Sequence record: MK308675.1
Direction: 5' to 3' (one strand)
Length of the DNA stretch: 64,000 nucleotides
The translations under genes were made by a program, and so were the position numbers. The notes under the pieces were generated by a model. It had not been told where the DNA came from and made no database searches. It saw nothing but the letters and a program-made list of their open reading frames with translations. Below are positions 10,275 through 42,916 of the stretch, piece after piece; position 1 is the stretch's first letter; every line of letters begins with the position of its first letter.

Positions 10275-12096
10275 CGTACCTTCAGCCAGTTCGTTAGACT
10301 GACCCGCAGCATGACCTGCTAAGCTCTAGGGTTTCCCACTAGACGACTCACCTTCGTGAGAAGGGCATTTGACTGCCGTCGAGACTATATCATCGGTTCC
10401 TCTCAAGGACACCGCCTCATGCTTCGCCCGCACTTGCTGGGCTAGCGCTAACTTATTCCGCTATTAGGATAGCATCTGTTAGCATTAGTCGTTGAACCTG
10501 CCACAGTTTAAAGTAGCTCGGCTGCTGATTACCAATTCCATGTTCCCTTAGGAGTGTCATCGCGACAGGTCCATAGGACATCTCTTATGTTCTTTCTGTT
10601 TTCACAGCCTTTCCATCTGAACTTTCGTTCTCTGTTTCGGCCATAAGAGCTTTACGGATTTCCAGCAATTCAAAAGGTTTTACTTCGACTTAGATTTCCA
10701 GCTTCTCAATCTTTTTATGTTAATGTTAAAGCGCCCAAGCAAAGGGACGTTTTTCTTTTCAGCGTTTCTTATTGTAGACTCAGCTATGCCTATTTGCTTA
10801 GCAACTTGCTGTATGGAAGTGCCTACGTAGATTTCTTTAGTTAAGGGGTCCTCTACAGTAACGATGGCCGAAATGCGACTAGCGTCCTTCAGGATAGCGC
10901 CTTCCGCTTCTGTAAAGTCTGGCCATTCAGGTTTGTCCAAAACGGGACGAACCACGTAGCCTCGGCACGGGACATCGTCGAAGGTACTCTTCATCCTGGA
11001 AACATTCGACTCCACTGTCCCTATGTATCTGGCAGCTGCTCCGGAACTTTCAAAGATTTTTACTTCTCCGAAACTTTCCGGGCGATAGCTTTTTACCATA
11101 CAGGACGCGCACATACCAGAGCGACCAACCTGTTTTTCTAGCTCCGACGCCACCGGTACCGGCAATCCGCTGTCTTCATAGGAAAAAGCATATGTGCCCT
11201 TTTCATTTAGCTGATAGACGGCTTCTTCTGCGGCTCTTCTAGAAAGGCGGTCCACGCTATTGAAGTGCATGCCTGTGGCTTTAGCGGCCACCGTAGAGGA
11301 ACTATATATTTCCTGAGTGTTTTCTCTAACGTCAAAAACACAAACTCTTCTACCCTTCCCTTTTCTTGAGATGTTCTTTTCTTTCCCGGCGTTCTTGCTC
11401 TGAGTAAGCCATTGAAGGTTACTGAGCCCATCATTAAAGCCATCAGTATCCTTATGGTCACACTCTAAAACATCCACGTTAGCCGGATAGTCTTTAAAAG
11501 CCAGTAGTTTCGCTCTGCCTCTCCCAAGTAACAGATGTCGCCCCAAGTCGTCTAAAATACTGGCCTTCATATAACGACCATGTATGCTAAATGAATGGGT
11601 CTTTCCGGTTGCTCCATTCAGCAATAGACCTTCTTTAGACAGTCCGTATTTCGTACAGCCTGGAATCCTAAAGTAATTTGGATTTTTTCTAAGCGGCAGG
11701 GGTTTGGTAAACCCATACGTTAGATTACCTGGATGTAGATTATTACGGTCACCGTCTATGAACAATGGGCGTATTTTTCTTACTTCTTCCAGAGAAAAAG
11801 CGAAGAGTTTCTTCCATGCCCAGACCATAACTTTAGCGATGGCCACTTCCACACGGCCATTATCGCTTTTTAAGAATACGCTTTTGTTTCTTCCATTGAC
11901 TTTGCGGACACATTTTGCTTCCGTTCCGTCACTAGAATAAACATTACCCTTTTTGTCTAGCCAGAGACCATAGTTTGGAATCTCGACTCGACTAACATTA
12001 ACATAACCACTTAAACGTTCTCTTTTCATAGCTTATCTCCTCTATGATATCCGTTTTTATGGTTTATTTTGATTTAAAAAACTTACCCTTCTTTTA
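10275..12096 (-). mobile_element. group I self-splicing intron (1822 nt) in nvRNAP beta' with a homing endonuclease ORF
   Basis: The 5' exon ends in U (TTCGAT), the intron starts TAA and ends in G. Core elements on the minus strand: P AATTGCTGGAAA (10659-10670), Q AATCAGCAG (10522-10530), R GTTCAACGACTA (10486-10497), S GATATAGTC (10383-10391). Confidence 0.93.
10680..12029 (-). CDS. intron-encoded HNH homing endonuclease with NUMOD4- and NUMOD1-like modules
   Basis: Intact motif CDHKDTDGFNDGLSNLQWLTQSKN; a degenerate first copy (FIDGDRNNLHPGNL); GAGGAG RBS inside the intron. Confidence 0.9.
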   Translation of the reverse strand: MKRERLSGYVNVSRVEIPNYGLWLDKKGNVYSSDGTEAKCVRKVNGRNKSVFLKSDNGRVEVAIAKVMVWAWKKLFAFSLEEVRKIRPLFIDGDRNNLHPGNLTYGFTKPLPLRKNPNYFRIPGCTKYGLSKEGLLLNGATGKTHSFSIHGRYMKASILDDLGRHLLLGRGRAKLLAFKDYPANVDVLECDHKDTDGFNDGLSNLQWLTQSKNAGKEKNISRKGKGRRVCVFDVRENTQEIYSSSTVAAKATGMHFNSVDRLSRRAAEEAVYQLNEKGTYAFSYEDSGLPVPVASELEKQVGRSGMCASCMVKSYRPESFGEVKIFESSGAAARYIGTVESNVSRMKSTFDDVPCRGYVVRPVLDKPEWPDFTEAEGAILKDASRISAIVTVEDPLTKEIYVGTSIQQVAKQIGIAESTIRNAEKKNVPLLGRFNINIKRLRSWKSKSK

Positions 12097-13434
12097 ATCG
12101 AAATCTGCGTTAGGTCCCACCAGTGCAAGGACCGAGAGTGCTATCTCGCATTCGCTTAGGCCCACGATTCTTAATCCTTGCGTGCTAGACCTTGCAAGAC
12201 TAGGATAACGAGTCAGAGCACACTTAATGCCGCCGCCCTTACGCTTACGTGTACGCAACGTAGAAGGCAGTTCTTTAAGTGTAGGGTTACCAGCCGCATC
12301 TTTTACTACGATGGTCTGAGCAACGCTCTCAGGAGTCGGAGGAGTATCATCGATAAGTTCTTCCAGGACATCTACAAGTAGAGGGTCCCAATCCGTAGCA
12401 TGTTGTAGTACGTAGGCTTGGGCCTGAGCGTGACTAAACTTATGTTTCCGGATGAGCTTAGCGATGACTAATGGTTCCAGACAAGTTAACATCTGATGGT
12501 ACGGTACGAGAATAGTATCGTACTCATGAGGACGATGATAAGACGTGATGATGTTACGGAACGAGTAGTTCATGCGCGTACCGAAGTTCACACGGCGTAA
12601 CCAACCAGACTTAGACGATAAGTTGTTTTCGATAACGTCTTTATAGTAGTTGGTTAAGTCTACCATGATGTTAGTAAAGCGAGTCTCTAATCGCTTCACG
12701 TTTATCATGCCCATTGTGCCGGCTGCGGCAAAGATAGCTTCCATTGCAGAAGCCATTGTCTTATCGTAGTAGTTACCGTAAGCTGTTGACTCGATGGCAA
12801 ATGCTACTTTAGACGGGATTGGAATGTGCTTAACGAATAGATGCTCACGGTACTCTTCCACAAACTCTTTCAGTTCTTGGCGTTTCTGCACGGAGGCAGT
12901 CTGGCGTAAAGCAACTTCTAGAATCTTGTCGAACTCTTCTTTTACATTAGAGAGGCCACGTTTAAGACCTAGCTTCTTGAAGTGCTCTACAATAGAGGTA
13001 CCTTTCTTCTTAGACTCATCTGGGTCAGGCAGCTTAGGGTCCATTGCCCACTGCAAGCCATCGAAGCCACGGTTATCCTTTAAGCGTTCGCTTAGGAAAA
13101 TCCAAGGCAGTGGTGCTAAGAAGTAATCGATGCCGCGAGGAACAGAAATCCAGATTTCCGATTCGATTGCTTGGTTGTGGTGAGATACCACTTTGGTGTT
13201 ACAGTGTTCACAGATAACACCGAGGTTAACTGCTTCTTTTGTCTTACGACAACCACACTGAGGCACAGTAGCTAAAACATCCGAAGACTCATACTTAGTC
13301 ACCGTCAATGACTCAAGTAGCTTTCGGTCTTCTTCGGTTTCAAGTTTCAGTTCGTTTACGATGACCGGAGGGTTTTCCATTGAAGATAAACGCCAGTCCA
13401 AGTTACCGAATTTTAGAACCTGTGTTCCTAACAT
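12097..13434 (-). CDS. nvRNAP beta' N-terminal subunit, exon 1 (phiKZ gp55-like)
   Basis: Zn-binding CGC...CEHC, GWLRRVNFGTRMNYSFR and TRYPSL; ends GPNADFD. The spliced product would be 508 aa. Confidence 0.92.
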
Positions 13435-14332: not shown

Positions 14333-16237
14333 TTAAGAAGTCACACCGTAACGGTATTGAGAACGACCTGCTTGGTATGCACCTTCACCGTATACACCAC
14401 GTTGTGATGTTGCAGTTTGGAATGCTTGACCAGGCTGGAACGCTTGACCAGCGTTGAAGCCGTGTACGCCTTGAGTGTTGTCGTAGTCAGTGTCAACCAG
14501 ACCTTCAGTGTTTAGAACCATGCCGCTGTTGATAACTGCTTGCATGAACGCTGGAAGGAAATCTGGAGAGTAGAAGAAACGGTCGTAGATACCGTCAATG
14601 TCTGCATTAACTACTTGCTTAAGGATTTCACGACGAGTGTGGATGTTCACAAGACCTTGTGGACCATTACAGCCGCCAGGTACTAGAGACTGCTGGAACT
14701 CACGCATGCGAGTGCCTGCTTCTGCACCGAACAGTTGTAGCATCTGTAGCTGACCACATTCACGTAGGTCGTGAGTGTTACCTTCTTTATCTGTGTAAGT
14801 ACCAGCATGAACAGCAACAGCTTGAGGCTGTAGTACTGGACGTGCTTCGTTACCCCAGATTGGAAGGAAGTGTCCGCCTAGGAATTGGTCTACTAGAGCT
14901 ACGAATTCTGCGTTTGCTTGTAGACGGTCTTGGTCATCACCTAGAACCGATGCAACTAGAAGTTCGTAAATCCATGCAGTACGACCACCACGCAGTACGT
15001 CGAATGCCACAGTGATTGTGTCATGTACGTTACGTGCAATGTACTGGTCAAGTGATACGCGGCCAGTTGTGTCCATACCCATAGATACAGATTTGTCTAG
15101 CTCAATTTCACATGGTGCCCAATCTTCAGCGCCAGTCATACGACCGTCCCACTGATAGTTAAGAACGCCTAGTGAAGGTTTGCCACCAAAGTTACGACGG
15201 AAGACCTGCTTGTAGTTCTGGCCAGACGCTTGCTGTGCAAGTGCTAGTAGGCTGAACAGTACAGTTTCTTCAGACTCGTATGCTTTAGCAGTGTGTGGGT
15301 CAATACCTTGAGCCACTGATTGAACTAGTAGAGGGTGGTACGCACGACGTACGAATTCACCGTTTTCTAGACGCACTGCATCGTTAGATGGAGCGAATAC
15401 GAAATCTACGTAAGTTTCAGCTTGGGCTAGAGTGATACGACGCTCACGGTTGTTACGAGAACGTTTAGCGTTACCGCGACGAGTACGTGCTTCACCAACA
15501 GTTACTGTAGAAGTAATGTCAGTGTAAGTTGGGTTACCTTCTACGTCAGATGTAGTTGAACCTGGGTTCACTTCATGACCGATTTCGATAGTAAGACCAC
15601 GGCTCACGATGTCTGGTGCGCTTACGGTAATGTTGCTGTTTAGAGACATTAGGTTACGTTCAGCTGTTGCGTATAGACAGCCTAGGTAAGCTTCATTCGT
15701 TAGGTCCATTGATGCACGAGCAGTCATGAAGCCGTTTTGAATGTAGTCTACAGTAGCACCGGTACGACGTACAACTTCGTCTGTGATAGCGTTAACAAGA
15801 ACGGCATCCCAGAACTCTGAAGTATCTGCGTCAAGAAGGATTGGTTGGTTTTCAACGATGATTTCTTCGCCTTTAACCGCGCCTTCATATGCACCTTCTT
15901 CGATTAGGATGGTGTAGAAACCTTTAGTCTCACCTACAGTGTTGTAGGCTACGATTGCAGGTACACCTACCTTCATGTCATCGTCGATTGCGATGAACTG
16001 AAGACCTAGTGCGTTGCGAGAAGCTTTCTTCTCAGTAGCAGCACGCTCATTAAGGAACGCTATGCCAGCTGTGATAGCTTCGTTGGTGCGACCAGTGAAG
16101 TCAGAAGCAGAGCCTAGAACTTGGTCTAGGAAGTTGCCGCCCATCGGTGCAGACTGTTGTGCAGCTGCGCCTTGCTCAGGTGCGTTAGTTTCAGTTTGTG
16201 CTTCTTTCTTAGCTTTGTTACCTTTAGGGTCGAACAT
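14333..16237 (-). CDS. chmA: chimallin, the major phage nuclear shell protein (phiKZ gp54-like)
   Basis: 634 aa with disordered Q/A-rich N-terminus and aromatic/Gly C-tail; strongly biased codons; own promoter and terminator; lies between the gp52-like gene and nvRNAP beta'. Confidence 0.85.
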   Translation of the reverse strand: MFDPKGNKAKKEAQTETNAPEQGAAAQQSAPMGGNFLDQVLGSASDFTGRTNEAITAGIAFLNERAATEKKASRNALGLQFIAIDDDMKVGVPAIVAYNTVGETKGFYTILIEEGAYEGAVKGEEIIVENQPILLDADTSEFWDAVLVNAITDEVVRRTGATVDYIQNGFMTARASMDLTNEAYLGCLYATAERNLMSLNSNITVSAPDIVSRGLTIEIGHEVNPGSTTSDVEGNPTYTDITSTVTVGEARTRRGNAKRSRNNRERRITLAQAETYVDFVFAPSNDAVRLENGEFVRRAYHPLLVQSVAQGIDPHTAKAYESEETVLFSLLALAQQASGQNYKQVFRRNFGGKPSLGVLNYQWDGRMTGAEDWAPCEIELDKSVSMGMDTTGRVSLDQYIARNVHDTITVAFDVLRGGRTAWIYELLVASVLGDDQDRLQANAEFVALVDQFLGGHFLPIWGNEARPVLQPQAVAVHAGTYTDKEGNTHDLRECGQLQMLQLFGAEAGTRMREFQQSLVPGGCNGPQGLVNIHTRREILKQVVNADIDGIYDRFFYSPDFLPAFMQAVINSGMVLNTEGLVDTDYDNTQGVHGFNAGQAFQPGQAFQTATSQRGVYGEGAYQAGRSQYRYGVTS

Positions 16238-40474: not shown

Positions 40475-40975
40475 TTAAAACTCTATAAAGAGTACTTCGG
40501 TATCGTCGGGGAAGATGTCGCAGATGGCTGCCTCTAAGACGCCTCTGTCTTCCGTCTTAGCGCAATACTCTCTCCATGGTACGATTACCCTCCTTCCTTG
40601 ATGTAAAGCTTCAGCTGCCTTTAGAGAGCCGATTAGAGCCGATTCCCTTAGTGCGTCTCCGTCTCTCTTATTCTCTATAAAGCAGTAGAGATTATAGACG
40701 TAGAATCCAGCAGACTCTTTAGCCCAAGTGAGCATACCTAGTTTGTCCGTACTTCCTCTATGGGTGCCCTTATCAGCGATATAGGCCTTAAAGAACTTGT
40801 TACGGAATGCGGACTGGAGTATGGTGTCCCAGTTACAACCGATGTTGCAGAAGTTCAGTAAGATATCGCCGGTCTTCAAAGAGCCCATAATGGACTCGTC
40901 GCTTTCTACTATTTTAGCCATGCGAAGAATTCCGTTACTAAAGTGTAGTGATAAGAAGTAACCCAGGATGCCCAT
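40475..40975 (-). CDS. degenerate macro-domain-like (ADP-ribose-binding) protein
   Basis: ILLNFCNIG...AFRNKF...VYNLY...VIVPW follows the macro-fold layout but lacks the Gly loops. Likely start at 40921 (MAKIVES). Confidence 0.5.
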   Translation of the reverse strand: MGILGYFLSLHFSNGILRMAKIVESDESIMGSLKTGDILLNFCNIGCNWDTILQSAFRNKFFKAYIADKGTHRGSTDKLGMLTWAKESAGFYVYNLYCFIENKRDGDALRESALIGSLKAAEALHQGRRVIVPWREYCAKTEDRGVLEAAICDIFPDDTEVLFIEF

Positions 40976-41031
40976 CCGGCTAACCAGATAAGCAATAGAA
41001 CGGCTAGCGCTAAGCCTCGAATCTTATTCAT
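40909..41031 (-). CDS. 40-aa single-TM microprotein (not in ORF track)
   Basis: MNKIRGLALAVLLLIWLAGWASWVTSYHYTLVTEFFAWLK with AGGAG RBS. Confidence 0.6.
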   Translation of the reverse strand: MNKIRGLALAVLLLIWLAGWASWVTSYHYTLVTEFFAWLK

Positions 41032-41049
41032 GTCGTGTCTCCTAATAAT

Positions 41050-41495
41050 ATAGTTAACAACTCGTCACTGTTAACTTACCGTCCACAGAAAGTCGTGCTT
41101 CTGTGTATGGGTTTCTCCAAAAATGGAATGCTCACCTTTCTTCGGGAAGGTGGGCAAACCTATTTATCCTTAACCCTTTTCTCTAATACTATAGTTTAGG
41201 GCTGTGCTTTTTCACGCCGCCCCTTGAGCGTGACCCAAACGAGCCTACAATCAATGCAATAATCCCGTGCATGACTGTAATCCTAAACTGTGTGGTTTTT
41301 CCGACTAAGTTGGTTGGAATATAGACTTGGGTCTCTTATAGATAGGATAATCTGTTCGAGACCATTTTTTCTATACCTCAAAATTATTGAGGTGTCGGTG
41401 GGCTTCTGGTTGGGTGCCGACATCTCTCCCTTCGGGGAACATTAATGACAGCCAATAAAGTAAATCTCCTCAGGACGTGTCCTGAGGAGATAAAC
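41050..41495 (+). ncRNA. putative structured non-coding RNA
   Basis: About 10 consecutive stems; two cUUCGg loops and several G-U pairs work only on the plus strand; no ORF of 60 aa or more. Confidence 0.4.
41464..41491. terminator. terminator after the dead-HNH gene, possibly also ending the plus-strand RNA
   Basis: 12-bp perfect stem. Confidence 0.7.
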
Positions 41496-41508
41496 TATTT
41501 ACCGCTTA

Positions 41509-42459
41509 TTACCAGCTTTCGTCGAACGATACTTCTTCATCAGAAGATGCAGGTTCTTCGTAAGTAGGTTCAGCCGTTGGGTTTGGTGATTCACTCACTG
41601 CACCGCCAGCTTCAGGTAGTTCAGGCATGTCTGCTTCAGCAGCTGACTTAACTTGCCATGGACCTTCGCTCACCATATCTTCTAATGGTTTACGCTGATG
41701 CTTAGCTAGACGTTTCTGTGTATCGTCGCCGAACTTGTACTCAACAGCACAGACTAGGAACTCAGGGAAGTTGTTGTATAACTTCTGCTGACCTGTTTCA
41801 CTGTTACGTACTTTAACTGCTTCACGTGGGACCCAAGTGATAGTACCAGTCTCTTTATCGAACTTAAGCTCATGTGAGAAGATGCCGCCACCGAAGTCAA
41901 TGAAGTTCTCAGGAAGAGGACCCCAAGCTAGTGCCTGTAGCATTTCTTTCTTAGCCCACCAAGGAGCGTTAGCAAACGCCGGACCGTCAGCTACAAGTTT
42001 GTACATTGTGTCGCTCTCAGGCGTTACAGGCATCTTGTTGTACGCATTAAGTACACGGCCATAGCGGTCGATAACGTAACGAGTATAACCAGGAATGTAG
42101 CGGAAGTTCTCGTCGTGTTCCCAAGGGATAGGGCTAGCGAATACGAAGTAGTAATCCGAAGCTTGATATTCAGAGTTGAACTTCTTAATCATTGGGTAGT
42201 GCGGATGCGATACCGGAATACCTGCCTGACGAAGAATCATAGAAGCTTTAGGAATGTCAATGCTCTTACGTTCAGTATCGCCATCGAAAAGAATCGTGTC
42301 GTTAGAAGGCTGTTCGCCTGGGTAACGGAAGTTCTTCGGAATGTTGCGGTCCATTTTTAGAATCGATTCAAAGCGCGGATTAAGTTCGTGCTCCGGGCCG
42401 TGATGTTCACGAGGTTTAGGTTGACGCTTTTGGCCACCCCAGCCACCACCATAATTCAT
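41509..42459 (-). CDS. catalytically dead homologue of the intron HNH endonuclease
   Basis: YFVFASPIPWEHDENFRYIPGYTRYVIDRYGRVLN aligns to the intron HNH; the DH...N...N motif is absent; biased codons; acidic tail. Confidence 0.6.
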   Translation of the reverse strand: MNYGGGWGGQKRQPKPREHHGPEHELNPRFESILKMDRNIPKNFRYPGEQPSNDTILFDGDTERKSIDIPKASMILRQAGIPVSHPHYPMIKKFNSEYQASDYYFVFASPIPWEHDENFRYIPGYTRYVIDRYGRVLNAYNKMPVTPESDTMYKLVADGPAFANAPWWAKKEMLQALAWGPLPENFIDFGGGIFSHELKFDKETGTITWVPREAVKVRNSETGQQKLYNNFPEFLVCAVEYKFGDDTQKRLAKHQRKPLEDMVSEGPWQVKSAAEADMPELPEAGGAVSESPNPTAEPTYEEPASSDEEVSFDESW

Positions 42460-42544
42460 GGGGTTCTCCTTACAAAAGAAAAAAGATTTGTTGTTTGTTA
42501 ATATAGGACGGCCATAAATCCCATCCTATATTATTAATATACGG

Positions 42545-42916
42545 CTAAGCTCTAGCCCAATTGTTCTCGCAGTCTCGTTCGATTGCAATTGGATTAGAGT
42601 CAGCTATAATGCCTTTAGTGAACTGTGCTCGACTTTTAACCGTAGGGTCATCATCGGAACTAAGCTCTTCTAGTTGCTCCATATTGCGAACAACTAATAG
42701 TCTTACGTTCGGGTCAGGATGTTTAGCTAGCTCAGCGAAGTCTTCTTGAGTATTCTCAGAGAAAGCTTCATCAAGCCATTGCTGGTTCTCCTGACCCGCA
42801 TATGCCGTTTTAAGGCGACAGCCTTGTGTATCGTTGAGAGCAAAGAATTGTCCCACGACAATAAGTTGGTCTCCGTTAATATTCGCCTGTTTCATATTCG
42901 AAATAACTTTGTACAT
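42545..42916 (-). CDS. hypothetical protein with HEAT/LRV-like motif
   Basis: LAKHPDPNVRLLVVRN and LSSDDDPTVKSRA. Confidence 0.55.
   Translation of the reverse strand: MYKVISNMKQANINGDQLIVVGQFFALNDTQGCRLKTAYAGQENQQWLDEAFSENTQEDFAELAKHPDPNVRLLVVRNMEQLEELSSDDDPTVKSRAQFTKGIIADSNPIAIERDCENNWARA

What the first reader, a model, noticed from the sequence alone, without database searches (positions are those of the whole stretch)
41509..42459. Domesticated, nuclease-dead copy of the intron homing endonuclease
Seen: colinear with the intron HNH (YFVFASPIPWEHDENFRYIPGYTRYVIDRYGRVLN vs TYGFTKPLPLRKNPNYFRIPGCTKYGLSKEGLLLN; LQALAWGPLP vs KLLAFKDYP; VKVRNSETGQQKLY vs VCVFDVRENTQEIY), but CDHKDTDGFND...N is replaced by SHELKFDKETGTITW. 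It has a strong RBS, high-expression codons, a G/R-rich head and an acidic tail, so it looks selected rather than decaying. Inference: repurposed as a nucleic-acid-binding protein, for example as immunity to homing endonucleases, an intron maturase or an RNP subunit.
Basis: partly seen in the sequence, partly recalled or inferred. Interest (0 to 1): 0.7.

Follow-up and report, generated by a model that had tools for sequence, protein, structure and literature searches.

The report
Dead homing endonuclease with SSB-like tail
A conserved gene with high-expression codon usage in a nucleus-forming Vibrio jumbo phage encodes a homing-endonuclease relative that has lost its cutting site and gained a floppy acidic tail like the one bacterial SSB uses to recruit DNA-repair and replication enzymes, so it probably acts as a DNA-bound docking protein, not a nuclease.

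Summary
[quoted passage not shown] Profile-profile probability is 99.5% (E 6e-23), and I-HmuI is the only notable PDB fold hit.

The active site is dismantled. The residue before the catalytic His is Ser, the helix carrying the metal-binding Asn is deleted, and the His is Tyr in 5 of 37 lineages.

The gene is under purifying selection (dN/dS 0.08) and sits at a fixed position downstream of the large terminase gene. It ranks 11th of 277 ORFs for codon bias, among the shell, capsid and sheath genes.

It is not a recent copy of this phage's intron endonuclease. It belongs to an old, unnamed family of at least 32 clusters at 50% identity.

New here: the tail is a P/A/Q-rich disordered linker ending in an acidic-aromatic tip (36 of 38 members). 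In 7 members the last residues match the SSB C-terminal motif.

My best reading (0.42) is a non-catalytic DNA-binding hub protein.

Novelty: new variant of a known kind. Interest 0.55.

The parts
41509..42459 (-). CDS, 316 aa plus stop; member of an unnamed family derived from HNH_3/NUMOD homing endonucleases
   Evidence: AF2 model with mean pLDDT 88.8 and pTM 0.81.
42400..42459 (-). aa 1-20: Gly/Arg-rich head, net charge +3, low model confidence
42325..42429 (-). aa 11-45: family-specific conserved N-terminal segment (R17 in 36/37, H24 in 37/37, E31 in 33/37) with a helix at aa 28-36. It is not aligned to the HNH relatives.
42145..42324 (-). aa 46-105: region aligned to the N-terminal part of the HNH relatives
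   Evidence: alignment starts at aa 53
41920..42144 (-). aa 106-180: NUMOD4-like beta sheet plus helix. This is the best conserved part: W113, P123, R127, Y128, V129, G134 and N138 are invariant in 35 sequences. It is also the only stretch found by pairwise BLASTP against the intron ORF.
41824..41919 (-). aa 181-212: remnant of the HNH beta-beta-alpha metal finger. The two strands are kept and so is His196 (32/37). The preceding residue is Ser (32/37) in place of the Asp/Asn of the relatives. The helix with the metal-binding Asn is absent (16-column gap).
41635..41823 (-). aa 213-275: one remnant of the NUMOD1-type repeat (hairpin plus helix). The further repeats and the HTH of the relatives are absent.
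41512..41634 (-). aa 276-316: disordered acidic tail (net charge -13 over aa 273-316) ending in SFDESW. Across the family it is a P/A/Q-rich linker with an acidic-aromatic tip.
42466..42471 (-). Shine-Dalgarno AAGGAG, 6 nt before the ATG
42499..42507 (-). Promoter-like 9-nt core (match to search pattern CCYATATTR), 48 nt upstream of the ATG. The chimallin gene has the same core upstream. It resembles the predicted phiKZ-group promoter word tabulated in PMC7058600.
42502..42530 (-). 10-bp hairpin between the upstream gene and the target. Its 3' arm carries the promoter-like core.
   Evidence: read
41464..41491 (-). Terminator-like hairpin (12 bp, T-rich tail) 18 nt after the stop. All six orthologous loci also have a hairpin right after the stop.
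10680..12029 (-). Comparator: intact HNH_3/NUMOD1 homing endonuclease ORF next to a group I intron core. It is a distant paralogue of the target.

Best explanation
The gene encodes a non-catalytic descendant of the I-HmuI-type (HNH_3/NUMOD) homing endonucleases. It has become a fixed gene of a clade of marine, nucleus-forming (chimallin-encoding) Vibrio jumbo phages, and its codon usage is that of a highly expressed gene.

Shown here:
- The folded body (aa ~11-275) is homologous to these endonucleases.
- The metal-finger active site is taken apart. The residue before the His is Ser, the helix with the metal-binding Asn is deleted, and the His is Tyr in 5 of 37 lineages.
- All but one of the C-terminal DNA-binding repeats are gone.
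- The NUMOD4-like sheet is the most conserved part.
- The family has added a conserved N-terminal segment and a 23-91-residue P/A/Q-rich disordered linker. The linker ends in an acidic tip with a terminal aromatic residue.
- The gene is under strong purifying selection and is syntenic in all loci examined.
- It is flanked by its own promoter-like site and terminator, and it is codon-biased like the shell and capsid genes.

Inferred:
- The body still binds DNA without cutting it.
- The tail works as the tail of bacterial SSB, T4 gp32 and T7 gp2.5 does. It would dock partner enzymes of replication, recombination or repair, and/or fold back on the DNA-binding surface to regulate it.
- The protein would thus be an abundant hub of phage DNA metabolism, made early with the shell protein.
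- The tip sequence varies between phages (SFDESW here, ...IPF in 7 others). The partner is therefore more likely a co-evolving phage protein than a conserved host protein.
For: Homology:
- The family profile searched against 1.84e9 representatives finds 32 full-length members at E<1e-30. About 55 further hits follow at E 5e-12 to 1e-3. Of 10 of these sampled with Pfam, 9 are HNH_3/NUMOD1/NUMOD4/I-HmuI_NUMOD-like proteins.
- hhalign gives 99.5%, E 6e-23, 209 columns.
- Foldseek against PDB gives I-HmuI (1u3e) as the only hit below E 0.2 for both models.
- Foldseek against BFVD gives 44 hits at E<=1e-3. The named ones are almost all HNH endonucleases, including those of Goslar, PA7 and phiKZ gp56.

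Loss of the active site: and the secondary structure.

Selection: dN/dS is 0.08 overall, 0.05 in the core and 0.15 in the tail.

Synteny: the order is virion protein, large terminase, opposite-strand ~400 aa gene, ~255 aa gene, ~115 aa gene, target. It holds in the window, L002, L004, L007, L008, L009 and BONAISHI.

Expression proxies:
- RBS.
- Codon axis rank 11 of 277, next to chimallin, major head protein, sheath and a UvsX-like gene.
- Promoter-like core shared with the chimallin gene.
- Terminator.

Tail:
- The last residue is F in 32, W in 3 and Y in 1 of 38 members.
- The third residue from the end is I/L/V/F in 33, and the fourth from the end is D in 23.
- 7 members end in IPF.
- The linker is 14% P, 15% A and 10% Q, against 6%, 6% and 3% in the core.
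- None of 55 HNH relatives has such a tail.
- No other ORF of the phage combines a disordered acidic tail with an aromatic end.

The SSB tip and its role in partner binding: PMC5872125. Phage proteins carrying the same tip: bioRxiv 10.64898/2026.04.29.721553 and PMC13687109.

No SSB is annotated in the Yong record or listed among the replication genes of BONAISHI and pir03.
Against: - DNA binding was not measured. The core is only weakly basic, with a family median net charge of +2 against +4 in the active relatives.
- The model is compact (pTM 0.81), whereas I-HmuI is extended along DNA. TM-scores to 1u3e are low (0.17/0.28), so the binding mode need not be conserved.
- The tip of the window's own protein (SFDESW) is a poor match to the canonical SSB tip.
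- No partner has been identified.
- Absence of a canonical SSB in these phages was not tested by profile search. It rests on absence of annotation only.
- The promoter-like site lacks the flanking positions shared by the strongest sites, and no expression data exist.
- The conserved position near the terminase gene could point to packaging instead.
Confidence: 0.42

Rival explanations
1. Decoy of host SSB. The tail mimics the host SSB C-terminal tip and titrates or redirects host SSB-interacting enzymes (exonucleases, helicases, repair factors). This would be host takeover or counter-defence. The HNH-derived body would serve as a scaffold or as an anchor on DNA.
For: - Seven family members end in the same last residues as the bacterial SSB tip printed in PMC5872125 and in bioRxiv 10.64898/2026.04.29.721553.
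- Prophage DUF669 proteins are proposed to mimic that tip (PMC13687109).
- The promoter-like core and the codon bias would suit a stoichiometric decoy made early.
Against: - The tip is variable across the family and diverges in this phage (SFDESW). Tip residues that dock into conserved host pockets would be expected to stay fixed.
- The strongest conservation lies in the NUMOD4-like sheet, not in the tail (dN/dS 0.05 against 0.15).
Confidence: 0.15
2. A dead endonuclease that still recognises a homing site or an intron. It would protect the phage's own target sites from homing endonucleases of co-infecting phages, or assist splicing of the group I intron as a maturase or RNP subunit.
For: - It is homologous to the intron-type HNH enzymes.
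- The window holds a group I intron with an HNH ORF in an RNA polymerase gene.
- Intron endonucleases take part in competition between nucleus-forming phages (PMC11620839).
- Two metagenomic relatives have a free-standing HNH gene inserted directly upstream of the family gene.
Against: - It is not close to this phage's own intron enzyme (15 bits).
- The family is old and syntenic, whereas the intron and free-standing HNH genes seen here sit in different genes in different relatives.
- It is present in BONAISHI, where the paper's only annotated HNH lies in a ribonucleotide reductase gene.
- Codon bias at the level of shell and capsid genes is not expected for a site-blocking factor.
- It is not encoded inside an intron, and nothing from Rfam lies next to it.
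- An SSB-type tail has no evident role in either function.
Confidence: 0.1
3. DNA-packaging accessory. A DNA-recognition or terminase-partner protein, a stand-in for the unidentified small terminase or analogous to the HNH proteins that assist terminases in HK97-like phages.
For: - The position three genes downstream of the large terminase is conserved in seven loci.
- HNH proteins as terminase partners are established for HK97-like phages (from my knowledge of the literature, not checked here).
- The 2025 review of nucleus-forming phages does not mention a small terminase.
Against: - An opposite-strand gene separates it from the terminase gene.
- It has its own promoter-like site of the type found before the shell gene, and its own terminator.
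- The HK97-type partners need an intact HNH motif, which is absent here.
Confidence: 0.1
4. Abundant virion or internal head protein whose homing-endonuclease fold serves a structural or DNA-condensing role.
For: - Its codon bias is comparable to that of structural genes.
- The neighbourhood holds virion protein genes.
- It has a highly charged tail.
Against: - It matches no PHROG structural family.
- Its promoter-like core is shared with the shell gene, not seen upstream of the capsid or sheath genes.
- No virion proteome is available for this clade.
Confidence: 0.08
5. Still a nuclease, using His196 with other conserved acidic residues (for example D158 and D188) as an alternative active site.
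For: - His196 is kept in 32 of 37 members.
- D158 and D188 are nearly invariant.
Against: - His196 is Tyr in 5 of 37 lineages.
- Both metal ligands of the canonical finger are missing.
Confidence: 0.04

Closest known systems
I-HmuI (phage SPO1 intron HNH nicking endonuclease, PDB 1U3E) and the HNH_3/NUMOD endonucleases of nucleus-forming phages (phiKZ gp56, Goslar, PA7)
   Same: - The same fold family and colinear domain order: N-terminal sheet of the NUMOD4 type, a helix, the beta hairpin of the HNH finger, then a NUMOD1-type repeat.
- The same kind of host genomes.
   Different: - No Asp/Asn before the His, and no helix with the metal-binding Asn.
- Only one repeat remnant and no HTH.
- Not in an intron and not sporadic, but syntenic and under purifying selection.
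- Extra conserved N-terminal segment and an SSB-type tail.
- No member reaches the Pfam HNH_3 or NUMOD4 thresholds.
Bacterial SSB, and phage SSB-like proteins that carry its C-terminal tip (Bas52_0087; prophage DUF669 proteins)
   Same: - The architecture: folded nucleic-acid-binding body, low-complexity P/Q/A-rich linker, acidic tip ending in an aromatic residue.
- Identical last residues in 7 members.
- Codon usage of a highly expressed gene.
   Different: - The body is not an OB fold. It is a homing-endonuclease fold.
- ssDNA binding and oligomerisation are unknown.
- The tip in this phage diverges.
Domesticated homing endonucleases (LAGLIDADG-derived WhiA and maturases; the AP2 DNA-binding domain linked to HNH-AP2 endonucleases). 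This row is from my knowledge of the literature.
   Same: A mobile-element nuclease kept for its nucleic-acid recognition after losing catalysis.
   Different: - A different endonuclease class, or a different retained module.
- None of those is known to me to carry an SSB-type tail or to be a phage gene fixed across a clade.
PhiPA3 gp210, the intron-encoded endonuclease that interferes with a co-infecting phage (PMC11620839)
   Same: A homing-endonuclease-family protein with a selective role in nucleus-forming phages.
   Different: gp210 is an active, intron-encoded enzyme. The protein here is inactive by sequence, free-standing and old.

Membership tests
HNH_3/NUMOD (I-HmuI-type) homing endonucleases | Detectable sequence and fold homology | tested here: met
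   hhalign 99.5%, E 6e-23. Profile hits to HNH_3/NUMOD proteins down to E 5e-12. I-HmuI is the top PDB fold hit twice. 44 BFVD hits.
HNH_3/NUMOD (I-HmuI-type) homing endonucleases | Match to the curated Pfam models (HNH_3 PF13392, NUMOD4 PF07463) above threshold | tested here: not met
   0 of 35 members. The best is NUMOD4 at E 0.048 in one member.
HNH_3/NUMOD (I-HmuI-type) homing endonucleases | Intact beta-beta-alpha metal finger: Asp/Asn-His pair plus the metal-binding Asn on the following helix | tested here: not met
   Ser precedes the His in 32/37. The His is Tyr in 5/37. There is a 16-column gap where the helix lies, and the model has no helix between aa 211 and 215.
HNH_3/NUMOD (I-HmuI-type) homing endonucleases | C-terminal NUMOD1/HTH DNA-binding repeats | tested here: not met
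   Only one repeat remnant aligns (aa 213-275). There are no Pfam NUMOD1 or HTH hits.
HNH_3/NUMOD (I-HmuI-type) homing endonucleases | Mobile-element behaviour: located in an intron or intein, or free-standing with sporadic distribution | tested here: not met
   The same syntenic position in seven loci, dN/dS 0.08, and no intron model nearby.
HNH_3/NUMOD (I-HmuI-type) homing endonucleases | Endonuclease activity | not testable with these tools
   Sequence alone argues against it.
SSB-type single-stranded DNA-binding proteins | OB-fold DNA-binding domain | tested here: not met
   No Pfam or PDB sequence hit. The fold hits are HNH endonucleases.
SSB-type single-stranded DNA-binding proteins | Intrinsically disordered low-complexity linker | tested here: met
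   pLDDT below 60 from aa 276 onwards. The linker is 14% P, 15% A and 10% Q, and 23-91 residues long.
SSB-type single-stranded DNA-binding proteins | Acidic C-terminal tip ending in hydrophobic-x-aromatic | tested here: met
   Aromatic end in 36/38. Hydrophobic residue third from the end in 33/38. At least 2 acidic residues in the last 8 in 32/38. Seven members end in IPF. The motif as printed in PMC5872125.
SSB-type single-stranded DNA-binding proteins | ssDNA binding and oligomerisation | not testable with these tools
   No data.
Terminase-associated HNH proteins (HK97 gp74 type) | Gene adjacent to the terminase genes | tested here: inconclusive
   Three genes downstream of the large terminase gene, with an opposite-strand gene between them and its own promoter-like site and terminator.
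Terminase-associated HNH proteins (HK97 gp74 type) | Intact HNH motif | tested here: not met
Intron-encoded maturases | Encoded within the intron it serves | tested here: not met
   The only Rfam intron in the window is at 10362-10756. Nothing lies around 40900-42600.

The most novel reading that the evidence does not exclude
This family is the functional single-stranded-DNA-binding or hub protein of a clade of nucleus-forming jumbo phages that have no recognised SSB. It would be an SSB analogue built on a dead homing-endonuclease fold instead of an OB fold, recruiting the phage's UvsX-like recombinase, polymerase or helicases inside the phage nucleus through its SSB-type tail.
Probability: 0.15. 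Interest if true: 0.8.

Novelty: new variant of a known kind. Interest (0 to 1): 0.55.

Why it matters
Homing endonucleases are usually treated as selfish passengers of phage genomes. Here one has been stripped of its active site and kept for a long time as a fixed gene with high-expression codon usage in nucleus-forming jumbo phages. It has also been fitted with the kind of tail that organises replication, recombination and repair around bacterial SSB.

If the inferred role is right, three things follow:
- It gives a name and a testable function to a family that every record and paper seen here lists as hypothetical, and that no Pfam or PHROG model captures.
- It points to how DNA metabolism may be organised inside the phage nucleus, in phages where no SSB has been annotated.
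- It adds a clear case of mobile-element domestication within viruses.

Tried and rejected
Searches with no result:
- Pfam and PHROGs on the protein itself gave nothing.
- PDB sequence searches with the single sequence and with the 10-sequence profile gave nothing useful.
- Rfam around the gene gave nothing above noise.
- The upstream neighbours (261 aa and 123 aa) and the opposite-strand 401 aa gene gave no informative Pfam, PHROG or PDB hits beyond phrog_2921 of unknown function.
- No virion proteome or transcriptome exists for this clade in the papers read.
- Literature searches for an SSB of nucleus-forming phages found nothing.

Considered and rejected:
- A recent duplicate of the intron ORF.
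- A decaying pseudogene.
- A true N-terminal fusion in P0012 and P0014. The extension is a separate HNH gene (phrog_953) called in frame with the family gene.

Limits:
- dN/dS could be estimated on one pair only. All other pairs are saturated at synonymous sites.
- I could not read model coordinates, so conserved residues were not mapped in three dimensions.

These were the C-terminal tip of bacterial SSB, fragments of the HNH motif and a phiKZ promoter word. I used two of them as literature search words. The report uses only letters printed by tools or papers, and gives conservation as counts.

Full report
**Where this is**

[quoted passage not shown] The phage is phiKZ-like and nucleus-forming. 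The window holds a chimallin homologue (14333-16237, phrog_4795). Relatives carry a tubulin-like gene (weak Pfam Tubulin hit) and a PhiKZ_VTX-domain gene. [quoted passage not shown] The ORF at 41509-42459(-) encodes 316 aa and is annotated as hypothetical.

**Checking the observation**

- Pairwise BLASTP against the intron ORF 10680-12029(-) finds one 33-residue segment (aa 107-139 in both, 36% identity, E 5e-5) and nothing else.
- The protein has nine clear homologues in the 5.8-billion-protein collection (34-59% identity).
- A profile of these ten, run against 1.84 billion representatives, finds 32 full-length family members at E<1e-30. About 55 weaker hits follow (E 5e-12 to 1e-3), confined to profile positions ~100-230.
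- I sampled 10 of these weaker hits with Pfam, and 9 are HNH_3, NUMOD1, NUMOD4 or I-HmuI_NUMOD-like proteins.
- A profile-profile alignment of 37 family members against these relatives plus the intron ORF gives probability 99.5%, E 6e-23 and 209 aligned columns (target 53-276, intron ORF 48-288).
- Two AlphaFold models were made. The first has pLDDT 76. With 35 sequences the second reaches pLDDT 88.8 and pTM 0.81, with aa 11-275 confident and 276-316 disordered.
- For both models I-HmuI (1u3e) is the only PDB fold hit of note (E 8e-3 and 3e-3; the next hit is at E 0.23 and 1.2).
- The TM-scores are low (0.17-0.31), so the fold evidence is supportive rather than decisive on its own.
- Against BFVD there are 44 hits at E<=1e-3. 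The named ones are almost all HNH endonucleases, including those of Goslar, PA7 and phiKZ gp56.

**The active site**

In the relatives the finger reads Asp/Asn-His, a hairpin, then a helix bearing the metal-binding Asn. These roles are known from I-HmuI and rest on my knowledge of the literature. In the target:

- The His is kept (H196, 32 of 37 members), but it is Tyr in five lineages.
- The preceding residue is Ser in 32 of 37.
- The alignment has a 16-column gap where the helix lies, and the model has no helix between aa 211 and 215.
- After the hairpin only one NUMOD1-type repeat remnant aligns. The further repeats and the HTH of the relatives are absent.

'Nuclease-dead' is therefore well supported by sequence, though not assayed. 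No member reaches any Pfam or PHROG model, so the family is unnamed.

**Selected, not decaying, and not a copy of this intron's enzyme**

- The one orthologue pair that is not saturated (86% identity) gives dN/dS 0.08. The value is 0.05 in the core and 0.15 in the tail.
- The gene order is conserved in seven loci: virion protein, large terminase (phrog_2), opposite-strand ~400 aa gene, ~255 aa gene, ~115 aa gene, target.
- Within the Yong genome the HNH profile finds the intron ORF, a second intact HNH_3 ORF outside the window, and the target.
- The family profile scores the phage's own intron ORF at only 15 bits, against 62 bits for the best metagenomic HNH. The inactivation is old and unrelated to this particular intron.

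**Expression proxies**

- AAGGAG lies 6 nt before the ATG.
- On the main axis of codon usage the gene ranks 11th of 277 ORFs (ENC 40.8, median 51.7). The top of that axis holds chimallin, the major head protein, a virion protein, the tail sheath and a UvsX-like recombinase.
- A terminator-like hairpin follows the stop codon, and all six orthologous loci have a hairpin there.
- The search pattern CCYATATTR has 12 matches in the window. Eleven are intergenic, and nine lie 43-115 nt upstream of a same-strand ORF.
- One such site lies upstream of the chimallin gene, and one lies 48 nt upstream of the target.
- The core resembles the predicted phiKZ-group promoter word tabulated in PMC7058600.
- The target's site lacks the flanks of the strongest sites, so the timing inference is weak.

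**What is new: the tail**

- Of 38 family members, 36 end in an aromatic residue (F 32, W 3, Y 1).
- The third residue from the end is I, L, V or F in 33. The fourth from the end is D in 23.
- 32 members have at least two acidic residues in the last eight.
- Seven members end in IPF.
- The preceding 23-91 residues are disordered and rich in P (14%), A (15%) and Q (10%).
- None of 55 HNH relatives has such a tail.
- Six other Yong ORFs pass the simple end filter (aromatic last residue, at least three acidic residues in the last eight). None of them has a long acidic low-complexity tail like this one.
- This is the architecture of bacterial SSB. Its tip (DDDIPF as printed in PMC5872125) docks many genome-maintenance enzymes.
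- The same tip has been noted on a phage SSB-like protein (bioRxiv 10.64898/2026.04.29.721553) and on prophage DUF669 proteins (PMC13687109).
- No SSB is annotated in the Yong record. None is listed among the replication genes of BONAISHI or pir03, which do have PolB, DnaB-like helicase, UvsX, RNase H, SbcCD-like nucleases, ligase and resolvase.
- A 2025 review of nucleus-forming phages does not mention SSB.
- This is absence of annotation, not proof of absence.

**Interpretation**

The best-supported reading is a non-catalytic DNA-binding adaptor. The most conserved part is the NUMOD4-like sheet (seven invariant residues in 35 sequences). By homology with I-HmuI-type enzymes this sheet is a DNA-contacting module. 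The added tail is of the partner-docking or self-regulating kind. Tip diversity (SFDESW here) suggests a co-evolving phage partner.

Points against:
- The core is only weakly basic.
- The model is compact, unlike DNA-bound I-HmuI.
- No partner is known.
- There are no expression data.

They are weighed in their own sections.

I recalled short motifs from memory while reasoning and used two of them as literature search words. The report relies only on letters printed by tools and papers.

Noticed in passing
window 10362-13434 (-): A group I intron core (Rfam RF00028, 53.8 bits) lies at 10362-10756, next to the intact HNH ORF 10680-12029. The upstream ORF 12094-13434 ends in ...NADFD, which is inside the conserved catalytic motif of the RNA polymerase beta-prime subunit. 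The intron therefore splits that motif.
   Followed up: partly
window 14333-16237 (-): Chimallin (nuclear shell protein) homologue, phrog_4795 at E 1e-31. It is the most codon-biased ORF of the genome, so the phage is nucleus-forming.
   Followed up: partly
window, 12 sites (e.g. 16351, 57197, 43716, 42507, 40319, 25374, 7395, 61747, 62141, all on the - strand): A promoter-like element with the core pattern CCYATATTR. Eleven of the 12 sites are intergenic, and nine lie 43-115 nt upstream of a same-strand ORF. A longer 19-nt version is found 5 times against 0.14 expected. It resembles the predicted phiKZ-group promoter word in PMC7058600.
   Followed up: partly
window 42545-42916 (-): A conserved 123-aa ORF, probably starting at its eighth codon, between the 261-aa gene and the target. 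It is not annotated in MK308674.1. It is 43% identical (E 3e-31) to the gene at the same position in a metagenomic relative, and it gives weak HEAT-repeat-like hits.
   Followed up: partly
window 41032-41463 (-): A 432-nt stretch without ORFs just downstream of the target's terminator. It folds much better than shuffles (z = -4.0). It has no Rfam match and no DNA similarity outside the four Yong phages. Orthologous loci have a gene here instead.
   Followed up: partly
P0012 (aa 1-260) and P0014 (aa 1-314), metagenomic relatives: A free-standing HNH endonuclease gene of a different type (phrog_953, E 1e-39) sits directly upstream of the family gene and was called in frame with it. This looks like an independent homing-endonuclease insertion next to a conserved gene.
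   Followed up: partly
MK308674.1 133848-134795 (-), L012 8848-9795, outside the window: A second intact HNH_3 endonuclease ORF (315 aa, Pfam E 1.9e-9) in the same phage.
   Followed up: no
L006 8736-10355 (BONAISHI ORF49c), L002 7007-8284, L007 11017-12303: Downstream of the family gene the neighbours vary. BONAISHI and pir03 have a Ro60-like 'RNA-binding protein' there, and two metagenomic relatives have a CCA-adding enzyme (PolyA_pol + HD). In Yong the CCA enzyme is elsewhere in the genome.
   Followed up: no
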